DNA of 64,000 nt from NCBI RefSeq assembly GCF_001194135.2, contig NC_069006.1, forward strand, positions 16,165,813 to 16,229,812, read 5' to 3'. Positions 23,858-25,552 of this stretch are shown here, one piece after another. How positions within the stretch are numbered: the stretch's first letter is position 1; each line of letters starts with the position of its first letter. The stretch is from Octopus bimaculoides. Lineage: Eukaryota. The notes beneath the pieces are model-generated. The model had not been told where the DNA came from. It made no database searches and saw only the letters and a list, made by a program, of their open reading frames with translations. A program made the position numbers and the translations under genes.

Positions 23858-24768
23858 CTGTGTATGTGTGTGTGTCTTTGTGTTTGTATTTGCCTCCCAC
23901 CACCACTTAACAACTAGTGTTGGTGTGTTTACATCCCTATAACATACCAGTTCAGCAAAACACCTTGATAGAATAAGGAATAAGATTTATAAAAAAAAGT
24001 CCTTGAAAAAAATAAAGTCTTGGAGGTCAATTTGTTCAACTAAAAACCCTACAAGGCGGTGCCCCAGCATGGCCACAGTCAAAAAATTTGTTCAACTAAA
24101 ACCCTTGAAGACAGTGGCCCCAGCATAGGCGTAAGTCAAATGACTGAAACAAGCAAACGAAAAGATAAAAGACAGAGACGAATATGAACATCATTATTGT
24201 TTTATTTACAAACTCTTGGTAATATTCCATACAGATTCACCACATTAGTTTTGTTCAAGAATTTCTTCCGGGAAATTTTTTTTAATTGTTTCTTCTTTCC
24301 TCCAAAAGCACATTTCTACATTTCTACACTCAACCAAACAAACTATTTTCTACATTGTTTTTGTGTAAAAACTAGTTAATATATCAATAATATGTCATTG
24401 TATCTTACACGTCAACTATTTTATTGAATCTGTCATTTTTTTTAATGTTTTTTTTGTTCATTATATTAGCTTTTATTTGCTCTTTTTTTTTTCTTATATG
24501 TTACGAAAAGAAAACGATTTATATTTTCCACCAGCAAAAGACATCTGTCTGTTAGTGTTGTTTCCTGTTAGTTCTTAACTGCAAAGAAGGCTAACTGAAT
24601 TGTTTATTAATCAGTAATTATATAAAAATGTAACAGTCCCATGAAGGGAATAATACTACTGCTATTTAGCCCTAGGAAGCAGCACCGCTTCCTGTCGGCC
24701 TTGACACATTTCCTGTGTCCTTATGTTTACAAGGGGGAGACAAGCACATCCACTTAGCTAAGCCTGCA

Positions 24769-24811
24769 TCCAGAGACATGTTTCTGAGTCTTTGCTCGTC
24801 ATCAGTCTGGA
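24769..24811 (-). ncRNA. Minimal type I hammerhead ribozyme (inverted copy)
   Basis: Reverse complement is identical to the motif at 25244-25286. Confidence 0.75.
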
Positions 24812-25243
24812 GTAGCAATGGCCTGCTAGTTGGAGATGCCTGTCAAGCTCTCGTAAACATATAATAAATCTAGTGAAACACATTCACTGATTTCAAAAAT
24901 AGAAATAATACATTTCTAAAATCTCTCAGAGATTTATGCAGTAGTGATGTCAACTTAATGTGACAGTCCATTAAGGCAATAAGGACACAGGAAATGTGTC
25001 AACGCTGACAGGAAGTGGTGCTGCTTCCTAGGGCTAAATAGCAGTAATATTATTCCTTTCATAGGACTGTCACATTAAGTTGACAGCATACAATTACTTT
25101 ATCGCATCACTACTGCATAAATCTCTCTGAGAGATTTAGAAATGTATTATTTCTATTTTTGAAATCAGTGAATGTGTTTCACTAGATTTATTATATGTTT
25201 ACGAGAGCTTGACAGGCATCTCCAACTAGCAGGCCATTGCTAC

Positions 25244-25286
25244 TCCAGACTGATGACGAGCAAAGACTCAGAAACATGTCTCTGGA
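25244..25286 (+). ncRNA. Minimal type I hammerhead ribozyme with palindromic helix III
   Basis: tccaga / CTGATGA / c-gag-caaaga-ctc-a / GAAA / catg / TC / tctgga. Stem I is a perfect 6 bp, helix III is the palindrome ACATGT, predicted cleavage after C25280. Confidence 0.75.
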
Positions 25287-25552
25287 TGCAGGCTTAGCTA
25301 AGTGGAGGTGCTTGTCTCCCCCTTGTAAACATAAGGACACAGGAAATGTGTCAAGGCCGACAGGAAGCGGTGCTGCTTCCTAGGGATAAATAGCAGTAGT
25401 ATTATTCCCTTCATGGGACTGTCACATTAAGTTGACAGCATACAATTACTTTATCGCATCACTACTGCATNNNNNNNNNNNNNNNNNNNNNNNNNNNNNN
25501 NNNNNNNNNNNNNNNNNNNNNNNNNNNNNNNNNNNNNNNNNNNNNNNNNNNN

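What the first reader, a model, noticed from the sequence alone, without database searches (positions are those of the whole stretch)
24632..25470. 352-bp hammerhead-ribozyme repeat: candidate cephalopod retrozyme or Penelope pLTR array
Seen: a 352-bp unit in tandem (24981-25332, then 25333 into the gap), preceded by a full inverted monomer. The unit has no ORF, several local hairpins (aggaagc-ggtgct-gcttcct; taaatctctctgagagattta; agtgaatgtgtttcact) and a complete hammerhead core: 6-bp stem I, CUGAUGA, 3-bp stem II, GAAA, palindromic ACAUGU helix III and UC cleavage site. Established: minimal type I hammerheads with palindromic helix III occur in Penelope-like pLTRs and in metazoan non-LTR retrozymes, where tandem copies fold as dimers and release small circular RNAs. 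Inference: this may be an octopus retrozyme family giving a ~352-nt circRNA. Caveat: only one hammerhead per strand is visible; a second plus-strand copy would have to lie in the gap.
Basis: partly seen in the sequence, partly recalled or inferred. Interest (0 to 1): 0.85.

Follow-up and report, generated by a model that had tools for sequence, protein, structure and literature searches.

The report
Hammerhead-ribozyme retrozyme-like repeat in octopus
A 352-bp non-coding repeat in an octopus genome carries a newt-type self-cleaving hammerhead RNA motif and is laid out the way Penelope-type retroelements insert, so it is a new member of the known animal "retrozyme" class, and this copy probably cannot release an RNA circle on its own.

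Summary
A 352-bp unit is repeated directly (24979-25330, then 25331-25470 up to the gap, 95% identity). It is preceded head-to-head by an inverted copy (24627-24982). A type I hammerhead motif sits at 25244-25286 (+), with the cut after C25280, and an identical copy sits at 24811-24769 (-).

A covariance model built from four experimentally cleaving retrozyme hammerheads ranks these two sites first in the window (29.3 bits, E~4e-6). The only flaw is a C·A at the base of helix II. Helix III (GAAACAUGUC) is identical to that of the dimer-dependent axolotl ribozyme HHR_Amex1.

The unit has no ORF, is 40% GC and folds strongly as a circle (z = -6.8). No RT or GIY-YIG remnant lies within about 4 kb. 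The inverted copy plus partial tandem next to (TA)n is the insertion signature of Penelope-like elements. A second, diverged hammerhead element of 337 bp (19829-20165) lies between (TA)n runs.

The array probably ends at the gap, after 1.4 units, so each strand has one ribozyme. A read-through transcript would fold into a 291-bp hairpin that buries it.

Verdict: a new member of a known kind (non-LTR retrozyme, a Penelope-like-element derivative), in an octopus. Activity and copy number are untested. Interest is modest.

The parts
24627..24982 (-). Inverted copy of the repeat. Read on the minus strand it runs from unit position ~72 through 352 to position 98. It has a 21-nt deletion and small indels near its inner end.
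   Evidence: It is 99% complementary to 25135-25428 over 294 nt.
24769..24811 (-). Hammerhead motif of the inverted copy. C17 is at 24775, so the predicted cut lies between 24775 and 24774.
   Evidence: The 43 nt are identical to the plus-strand motif. Model R1 scores it 29.3 bits, E 3.8e-6.
24979..25330 (+). Direct unit 1 (352 bp). Positions 1-141 look like an older 3'-terminal fragment; position 142 onward belongs to the younger full-length copy.
   Evidence: The circular fold has -116 kcal/mol, z = -6.8.
25331..25470 (+). Direct unit 2, positions 1-140. It stops at the assembly gap and probably ends at about position 141.
   Evidence: It is 95% identical to 24979-25118. The end is compared with the element at 19829-20165.
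25244..25286 (+). Type I hammerhead: helix I UCCAGA/UCUGGA, CUGAUGA, helix II C·A plus GAG/CUC with loop CAAAGA, GAAA, helix III ACAUGU, cut after C25280.
   Evidence: Helix III equals that of axolotl Ax330.
25194..25333 (+). Long imperfect stem (25194-25230 pairs with 25297-25333) that carries the hammerhead at its tip.
   Evidence: Inverted repeat I3. The stem is present in the circular minimum-energy fold.
25471..25641 (.). Assembly gap (82 N, 25471-25552) followed by a (TA)n microsatellite (25553-25641). This is the probable insertion target and the right-hand end of the array.
19829..20165 (+). Second, diverged hammerhead-bearing element of 337 bp. It is a solo monomer lying between (TA)n(TG)n on the left and (TA)n on the right.
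   Evidence: A semi-global alignment places it on unit positions 158 to 141 at 67% identity. Homology outside the ribozyme is marginal.
19934..19980 (+). Hammerhead-like motif of the second element: CCAUCA CUGAUGA AUCC-AAGGAG-GGUU GAAA UCAUGUGAU C UAGUGG. Helix I has one mismatch.
   Evidence: Model R1 scores it 22.5 bits, E 3.8e-4.

Best explanation
The locus is an insertion of a small, non-coding, hammerhead-bearing retroelement of the animal non-LTR retrozyme type. That type is regarded as a non-autonomous derivative of Penelope-like elements (PLEs). The host is an octopus.

Inferred way of working, taken from the known family:
- Copies are transcribed.
- The hammerhead has almost no helix III of its own. 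It pairs through its palindromic ACAUGU with a second hammerhead, either in a tandem transcript or in trans, and cuts after C17.
- RNA cut at both ends is unit-length. A host tRNA ligase (RtcB) could join it into a ~352-nt circle.
- A PLE reverse transcriptase/GIY-YIG endonuclease copies the RNA into microsatellite targets.

Shown here: the repeat structure, the ribozyme motif and its fit to validated retrozyme ribozymes, the absence of coding capacity, the strong RNA fold, the PLE-style layout (head-to-head inverted copy plus partial tandem) next to (TA)n, and a second related element nearby.

Specific to this locus: it most likely holds 1.4 direct units and one inverted unit, so one ribozyme per strand. 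It therefore cannot excise a monomer by itself. A transcript reading through it would fold into a long hairpin instead. It is best seen as a product of the family rather than a source of circles.
For: Repeat anatomy:
- The 352-nt period and the inverted copy are confirmed.

Ribozyme:
- The core, the 6-bp helix I and the palindromic helix III are present.
- Chance expectation is 0.037 per window, and 0 of 300 simulations once the palindromic helix III is required.
- Model R1 was built from the coral, mussel and two axolotl retrozyme ribozymes, all of which cleave in vitro. It ranks the two copies first in the window at 29.3 bits, E~4e-6. That is at the top of the range it gives independent minimal hammerheads.
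- GAAACAUGUC is identical to HHR_Amex1, which cleaves 6% in one hour as a monomer and efficiently as a dimer.
- Ax353 has a U·U at the base of helix II and still cleaves, so a mismatch at that position has a precedent.

Retrozyme traits:
- There is no ORF and no Pfam domain in 20900-30000.
- The unit is 40% GC, 62% paired, z = -6.8.
- Substitutions between units preserve structure. Positions 79 and 85 change together as a compensatory pair, and two G·U pairs become G-C.

PLE-type insertion signature:
- PLE insertions are described as a partial tandem with an adjacent inverted 5'-truncated copy, biased to microsatellites including (TA)n, and prone to break short-read assemblies (PMC8557442).
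- Here the composite ends in a gap followed by (TA)n.
- The second element has (TA)n on both sides, whereas only 5.4% of window positions lie within 60 nt of such a run.

Host and literature:
- The host is an octopus. Penelope elements are abundant in octopus genomes (PMC8967140).
- Retrozymes are reported to be relatives of PLE pLTRs and to occur as monomers, dimers and multimers (bioRxiv 10.64898/2026.07.22.740005).
Against: - No Rfam hammerhead family matches, even at E<=10 on 96 nt. The same settings also miss flawless minimal hammerheads in other loci, so this negative carries little weight.
- The G10.1-C11.1 pair, described as highly conserved (PMC4209133), is replaced by C·A, and helix II has only 3 Watson-Crick pairs. 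Activity is therefore uncertain.
- The two ribozyme copies in the main locus are identical recent duplicates, so they give no independent covariation.
- Homology of the second element outside the ribozyme is marginal (nhmmer finds nothing; downstream flank p~0.03, upstream not significant).
- No further copies could be retrieved, so copy number, expression and any link to a particular PLE are unknown.
- The inverted copy ends at unit position 98, not 141, and the locus is a mosaic of 99% and 93-95% identical blocks. The simple model does not explain either.
Confidence: 0.65

Rival explanations
1. The 352 bp are not an independent non-autonomous family. They are the 3'-terminal (pLTR/UTR) part of an autonomous Penelope-like element, present here as heavily 5'-truncated copies stacked in tandem and in inverted orientation.
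For: PLE insertions are typically strongly 5'-truncated and form exactly such partial-tandem and inverted structures. Under this reading the direct array is a 141-nt 3' fragment followed by a 352-nt 3' fragment. In PLEs the hammerhead lies near the 3' end. Penelope elements are abundant in octopus.
Against: The same junction between unit positions 141 and 142 occurs in both the direct and the inverted copy. The second element is also about unit length, with its two ends adjacent on the circular map (positions 158 to 141). This argues for a discrete ~340-352-bp unit rather than random truncation points. No RT or GIY-YIG remnant lies nearby. The ribozyme has the canonical retrozyme architecture (6-bp helix I, short helix II, short palindromic helix III), not the PLE minimal type with a long helix II and no helix III.
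Confidence: 0.2
2. The copy is an inactive relic. The hammerhead no longer cleaves because of the C·A at 10.1/11.1 and the 3-bp helix II. If the locus is transcribed at all, it behaves as a long inverted-repeat hairpin, a possible substrate for Dicer or ADAR, rather than as a ribozyme.
For: The C·A mismatch is at a position reported as highly conserved. A transcript of 24627-25470 folds at -667 kcal/mol with 291 inter-arm pairs, and every ribozyme nucleotide is paired to its antisense copy. On either strand the antisense arm is transcribed before the sense ribozyme. The MIR6224 match (E 7.8e-6) reflects this hairpin shape.
Against: Ax353, with a U·U at the same position, still cleaves (22% per hour as a monomer, efficiently as a dimer). 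The ribozyme is intact in both copies, and substitutions elsewhere in the unit preserve structure. Transcription starting inside the units and reading outward would avoid forming the hairpin.
Confidence: 0.25
3. This is an ordinary satellite or segmental inverted duplication in which a hammerhead-like string arose by chance.
For: There is no Rfam hit. Only one independent copy of the motif exists in the main locus. The genome is large, so relaxed descriptors will find chance hits somewhere (0.43 relaxed hits per window).
Against: The strict descriptor gave 0 hits in 300 simulations. Model R1 gives E~4e-6, and the next best hit in the window lies in a second element of similar size. Helix III matches HHR_Amex1 exactly and loop 2 differs by one base. 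Unit size, GC content and fold all match retrozymes.
Confidence: 0.05
4. The head-to-head arrangement is an assembly artefact at a repeat next to a gap.
For: The assembly is a gap-rich draft with 14 gaps in 64 kb. PLE-type structures are known to confuse short-read assemblies.
Against: The arms are not identical: there are 3 mismatches in 294 nt plus a 21-nt deletion and other indels at the inner end. The whole 24627-25470 stretch is one uninterrupted contig. Similar head-to-head hammerhead pairs occur in unrelated contigs L007 and L012.
Confidence: 0.05

Closest known systems
Metazoan non-LTR retrozymes (Cervera & de la Peña 2020, PMC7229834), e.g. mussel Mg353, coral Amil224, axolotl Ax330/Ax353
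   Same: Non-coding unit of 150-450 bp (352 here; mussel 350-390). GC below 45-50%. One type I hammerhead per unit with a 6-bp helix I and a short palindromic helix III. Strongly self-paired predicted circle. Occurs as a monomer or short multimer.
   Different: Only 1.4 direct units with a single same-strand ribozyme are visible. An inverted copy is attached. Helix II is closed by C·A. No expression or circle data exist. The copy number is unknown.
Newt/axolotl satellite 2 hammerhead (HHR_Amex1, 330-bp repeat)
   Same: Identical GAAACAUGUC, that is one A-U pair capped by the palindromic tetraloop CAUG, which forces the ribozyme to act as a dimer. Loop 2 is CAAAGA versus CAAAAA. A GCURC stretch lies 5' of helix I and UGC lies 3' of it.
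   Different: The host is a mollusc rather than an amphibian; the NAR paper describes invertebrate retrozyme ribozymes as mostly competent as monomers. Helix II here has 3 pairs plus C·A, against 4 pairs in Amex1. The two domains are about 68% identical overall.
Penelope-like element pLTRs with minimal hammerheads (Cervera & de la Peña 2014, PMC4209133; Craig et al. 2021, PMC8557442)
   Same: An inverted 5'-truncated copy next to a partial tandem. Microsatellite ((TA)n) flanks. An unpaired nucleotide 5' of stem II is one possible reading of the extra C. Palindromic positions 15.2-16.2.
   Different: There is no RT-GIY-YIG ORF between or beside the repeats. The period is 352 bp rather than ~3 kb. 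The ribozyme has the canonical helix sizes, not the long helix II, short helix I and absent helix III of PLE minimal hammerheads.
Schistosoma Sm-alpha and cave-cricket pDo500 hammerhead satellites (own knowledge; cited in the reference list of PMC7229834)
   Same: Short non-coding repeats that carry a type I hammerhead and are transcribed and self-processed.
   Different: No sequences were compared here. This is a lead from memory, not a test.

Membership tests
Hammerhead ribozyme, type I | Conserved core CUGANGA ... GAAA ... UH with helix I open | tested here: met
   CUGAUGA at 25250-25256, GAAA at 25271-25274, U25279-C25280.
Hammerhead ribozyme, type I | Helices I, II and III formed by Watson-Crick or G·U pairs around the core | tested here: met
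   Helix I has 6 bp. Helix II has 3 bp plus the mismatch. Helix III has A-U and C-G within the palindrome ACAUGU.
Hammerhead ribozyme, type I | G10.1-C11.1 pair at the base of helix II | tested here: not met
   The pair is C25257·A25270, flagged as non-standard by cmsearch. Ax353, with U·U at this position, still cleaves.
Hammerhead ribozyme, type I | Score above the Rfam gathering threshold for a hammerhead family | tested here: not met
   There is no hammerhead hit, even at E<=10. As a control, Rfam also misses perfect minimal hammerheads in L001-L012.
Hammerhead ribozyme, type I | Match to a model of experimentally cleaving retrozyme hammerheads | tested here: met
   Model R1 gives 29.3 bits, E 3.8e-6, the top two hits in the window.
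Hammerhead ribozyme, type I | Site-specific self-cleavage | not testable with these tools
   This needs in vitro transcription of monomer and dimer constructs.
Metazoan non-LTR retrozyme | Tandem repeats of 150-450 bp, each unit with a type I hammerhead | tested here: inconclusive
   The period is 352 bp, but only 1.4 direct units and one same-strand ribozyme are assembled, and the array probably ends at the gap. Monomers and dimers are common in known families.
Metazoan non-LTR retrozyme | No coding capacity; no LTR, PBS or PPT | tested here: met
   The longest ATG ORF is 41 aa and there is no Pfam hit. PBS and PPT were not searched for specifically.
Metazoan non-LTR retrozyme | Low GC (<45-50%) and a highly self-paired predicted circular RNA | tested here: met
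   GC is 40%, 62% of bases are paired, and z = -6.8 against 200 dinucleotide shuffles.
Metazoan non-LTR retrozyme | Many genomic copies; expressed as linear and circular unit-length RNAs | not testable with these tools
   No octopus genome or transcriptome could be reached. Pattern scans and protein-based look-ups found nothing. One diverged relative lies in the window.
Penelope-like element (pLTR of an autonomous copy) | Repeats flank or adjoin an ORF encoding RT and GIY-YIG endonuclease | tested here: not met
   There is no RVT or GIY-YIG signal in any open stretch >=40 aa of 20900-30000, and no long ORF.
Penelope-like element (pLTR of an autonomous copy) | Partial tandem with an adjacent inverted 5'-truncated copy | tested here: met
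   The definition comes from PMC8557442.
Penelope-like element (pLTR of an autonomous copy) | Insertion into microsatellites such as (TA)n | tested here: inconclusive
   In the main locus (TA)n follows the gap and the left flank is TA-rich. The second element has (TA)n on both sides. Gaps in this assembly often sit in (TA)n anyway.

The most novel reading that the evidence does not exclude
Octopuses may harbour an undescribed family of dimer-dependent, amphibian-type hammerhead retrozymes that are expressed as ~352-nt circular RNAs. Head-to-head insertions like this one may in addition generate long near-perfect double-stranded RNA hairpins that feed the very active cephalopod A-to-I editing or small-RNA pathways.
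Probability: 0.15. Interest if true: 0.55.

Novelty: new member of a known kind. Interest (0 to 1): 0.3.

Why it matters
Hammerhead retrozymes are known from cnidarians, bivalves, insects, flatworms and amphibians. I found no paper in the held library that describes them in cephalopods; the only trace is a count of 235 Rfam Hammerhead_1 hits in the giant squid genome. This locus would extend the class to octopuses.

It would also show that the weak, dimer-requiring helix III, which the NAR 2020 paper presents as typical of amphibians, occurs in a mollusc as well.

In addition, it gives a worked example of a retrozyme-sized element in the inverted-plus-partial-tandem, microsatellite-targeted layout of Penelope-like elements. 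That fits the recent proposal that animal retrozymes are non-autonomous PLE derivatives.

None of this would surprise a specialist. The practical value is a defined sequence for annotating octopus repeats and for looking for ribozyme-derived circular RNAs.

Tried and rejected
1. Rfam at gathering and E-value thresholds gave no hammerhead hit. The MIR6224, snoRNA and coronavirus-UTR matches are artefacts of the inverted repeat or of UGAUGA strings. Controls show Rfam also misses perfect minimal hammerheads.
2. The exact 31-nt ribozyme string found nothing in metagenome or prokaryotic genome collections.
3. A relaxed pattern found 12 metagenome contigs with minimal hammerheads, probably from an animal host. 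They are unrelated to the unit, hold no PLE ORF and were used only as controls.
4. I tried to fish for further copies through proteins predicted from the repeat. The 62-aa open stretch, the 41-aa ORF and a SINE-containing ORF all found nothing.
5. The LINE-tail search identified the host as an octopus. The one retrievable contig, L013, is from another organism. It holds a PLE but shares nothing with the unit.
6. A weak BLAST match of the ribozyme region to 13527-13573 is a coincidence with the 5' end of a tRNA-derived SINE plus unique flank.
7. A third hammerhead-like string at 20966-21045 (-) scores 12.9 bits, E 0.25, and shows no homology to either element. It was rejected.
8. A box-A-like 11-mer lies in the unit, but there is no box B and no tRNA fold, so a Pol III SINE reading was not pursued.
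9. Pfam scans given DNA references failed because of stop codons. They were repeated with the open stretches joined by X.
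Full report
**What is in the sequence.** The window is a gap-rich draft with 14 runs of N and 37% GC.

Between 24627 and 25470 lies one uninterrupted contig stretch made of a single 352-bp sequence in three pieces:
- a direct unit, 24979-25330;
- the first 140 nt of a second direct unit, 25331-25470, 95% identical to the start of the first, which runs into an 82-N gap;
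- a head-to-head inverted copy, 24627-24982.

Read on the minus strand, the inverted copy runs from unit position ~72 through 352 to position 98. Over 294 nt it is 99% complementary to 25135-25428. Near its inner end it has a 21-nt deletion and small indels. Tandem Repeats Finder does not list the array because fewer than two copies are assembled.

**The hammerhead.** At 25244-25286 the plus strand reads UCCAGA CUGAUGA C-GAG-CAAAGA-CUC-A GAAA CAUGU C UCUGGA. The same 43 nt sit on the minus strand at 24811-24769.
Cervera and de la Peña report a highly conserved G-C there (PMC4209133).

In 300 simulated sequences of the window's length and dinucleotide content, a descriptor with helix I >=6 bp and helix II >=3 bp occurs 0.037 times per window. 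With a short palindromic helix III it never occurs.

Rfam gives no hammerhead match at its gathering score, nor at E<=10 on a 96-nt slice. This negative is weak. Under the same settings Rfam also misses flawless minimal type I hammerheads found in other contigs.

**A direct membership test.** The supplement of PMC7229834 prints four retrozyme constructs that self-cleave in vitro: coral Amil224, mussel Mg353, and axolotl Ax353 and Ax330. I aligned their ribozymes, built a covariance model from them and searched the whole window with filters off.
- The two copies of the motif are the best hits, at 29.3 bits and E about 4e-6 (the calibration is rough). The only pair flagged as non-standard is the C·A.
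- The same model gives 16-30 bits to independent minimal hammerheads in metagenome contigs, so the octopus motif scores at the top of that range.
- Its GAAACAUGUC is identical to that of Ax330 (HHR_Amex1). The paper describes this as a single base pair capped by a palindromic tetraloop. It cleaves 6% in an hour as a monomer but efficiently in dimeric constructs.
- Loop 2 (CAAAGA versus CAAAAA) and the nucleotides flanking helix I also resemble Ax330.
- Ax353 carries a U·U at the base of helix II and still cleaves, so a mismatch there is not disqualifying.

I put the chance that the octopus ribozyme cleaves as a dimer at about one half.

**The unit as an RNA.** The 352-nt circle has a predicted energy of -116 kcal/mol. 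That is 6.8 standard deviations below dinucleotide shuffles; the complement gives -5.7. The hammerhead sits at the tip of a long imperfect stem (25194-25230 pairing with 25297-25333), and the rest of the unit forms a cluster of hairpins.

Seven substitutions separate the two direct copies:
- two form a compensatory pair (79 T>C with 85 A>G);
- two turn G·U into G-C;
- two are unpaired;
- one breaks a pair.

The numbers are small, but they point to constraint at the RNA level. Size, 40% GC, lack of coding capacity and self-pairing all match the published description of metazoan non-LTR retrozymes.

**Retrozyme or Penelope pLTR.** No RT or GIY-YIG signal is found in any open stretch of 40 aa or more between 20900 and 30000, and the window has no long ORF other than low-complexity ones. 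The repeat period is 352 bp, not the ~3 kb of a pLTR-ORF-pLTR unit. The ribozyme has canonical helix sizes rather than the long helix II, short helix I and absent helix III of PLE minimal hammerheads. So this is not the pLTR of an autonomous copy.

The layout, however, is the one described for PLE insertions: a partial tandem with an inverted 5'-truncated copy next to it, a bias towards microsatellites including (TA)n, and a tendency to break short-read assemblies (PMC8557442). Penelope elements are abundant in octopus genomes. A 2026 preprint reports that animal retrozymes co-occur with PLEs, are related to their pLTRs, and occur as monomers, dimers and multimers. The locus is best called a non-autonomous, PLE-type retrozyme insertion.

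**A second element and the end of the array.** The model's third hit (22.5 bits, E about 4e-4) is at 19934-19980: CCAUCA CUGAUGA AUCC-AAGGAG-GGUU GAAA UCAUGUGAU C UAGUGG. It lies in a 337-bp segment, 19829-20165, bounded on the left by (TA)n(TG)n and on the right by (TA)n followed by a gap.

A semi-global alignment places this segment on unit positions 158 to 141 at 67% identity. The score is 17.5, against 3.4 +/- 1.9 for shuffles. Much of that signal comes from the ribozyme itself. Outside it, the downstream flank is marginal (p about 0.03), the upstream flank is not significant, and nhmmer sees nothing. I treat the segment as a probable distant relative.

Against the main ribozyme, three helix I pairs and three helix II pairs differ on both sides yet still pair, while the core is unchanged.

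The 3' end of the second element aligns to unit position 141 and abuts (TA)n. The main array is assembled up to position 140 of its second unit. Then come the 82-N gap and (TA)n. The simplest reading is that the array ends there, at 1.4 units, and that the gap lies inside the microsatellite. A second plus-strand ribozyme would need about 130 nt more than the gap is sized to hold.

**Consequences for function at this locus.** Each strand carries one ribozyme, so the locus cannot release a unit-length RNA by double cleavage. A ribozyme that needs a partner would have to find one in trans. Co-folding two ribozyme domains gains only about 3 kcal/mol over two separate monomers.

A transcript crossing 24627-25470 folds into a hairpin with 291 inter-arm pairs (-667 kcal/mol). 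Every ribozyme nucleotide is then paired with its antisense copy. On either strand the antisense arm is made first. Only transcription that starts inside the units and reads outward would expose the ribozyme.

The locus is therefore more likely a product of the family's activity than a source of circles.

**Unexplained.** The locus is a mosaic. The block running from unit position 142 through 352 to position 98 is 99% identical in the two orientations. On each side it is preceded by an older-looking 3' fragment that is 93-95% identical, and the two older fragments differ from each other. The inverted copy ends at unit position 98, not 141. Possible causes are two rounds of insertion into earlier copies or a heterogeneous multimeric template. 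PLE endonuclease has been assayed on a DNA target taken from its own ORF-pLTR junction. I cannot decide between these causes.

**Novelty and limits.** Searches of the held literature found no description of hammerhead retrozymes in cephalopods. The only trace is the count of 235 Rfam Hammerhead_1 hits in the giant squid genome. No octopus genome, Dfam or Repbase was available, and every attempt to retrieve further copies failed. Copy number, expression, activity and the identity of the autonomous partner therefore remain open.

This is a new member of a known kind, and of modest interest.

Noticed in passing
window 5954-6072 (+): A 5S rRNA match (88.8 bits, E 1e-17) whose terminal helix is mismatched. 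It could be a 5S gene or a 5S-derived repeat.
   Followed up: no
window ~8255-8320 (+), 13555-13800 (+), 18500-18735 (-), 30235-30370 (+), ~61575 (-): Copies of a tRNA-derived SINE that starts GTGGAGGCGCAATGGCCCAGTGG, with box A and box B. Their translated tails recur among the window's ORFs.
   Followed up: partly
window 25295-25305 (+) and 24750-24760 (-): A box-A-like 11-mer, TAGCTAAGTGG, lies 15 nt downstream of the predicted cleavage site in both copies of the unit. There is no box B within one mismatch and no tRNA-like fold.
   Followed up: partly
window 20966-21045 (-): A weak hammerhead-like string (CUGAAGA ... GAAACAUGUGUU) just after the 20193-20837 gap and (AG)n. It scores 12.9 bits, E 0.25, and has no homology to either element. 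It was judged to be chance.
   Followed up: yes
window ~62630-62718 and other LINE fragments: A LINE tail ORF has Octopus bimaculoides proteins as its 15 best matches. One related cluster (P0022) is labelled 'hypothetical protein Escherichia coli', which is probably animal contamination in a bacterial record.
   Followed up: no
L007 4748-5198 and L012 2195-2645 (JGI metagenome contigs): Head-to-head 189-nt inverted repeats, 96% complementary, each carrying a minimal hammerhead CUGAUGA-U-GGCC-AAAUA-GGCC-GAAACAUGUC, with no PLE ORF nearby. L004, L006 and L008 hold further model hits. Rfam detects none of them.
   Followed up: partly
L013 1329-2873 (-) (ENA metagenome assembly ERZ25878469, 1.97-Mb contig, 31% GC): Adjacent genes with RVT_1, HTH_animal and a faint GIY-YIG hit, which together indicate a Penelope-like element in an unidentified animal host contig. 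It shares only a LINE tail with the window.
   Followed up: partly
window 25057/25063 versus 25409/25415: A compensatory double substitution between the two direct units keeps the hairpin CCUUUCAUAGG / CCCUUCAUGGG paired. The inverted copy's outer part carries the second version.
   Followed up: yes
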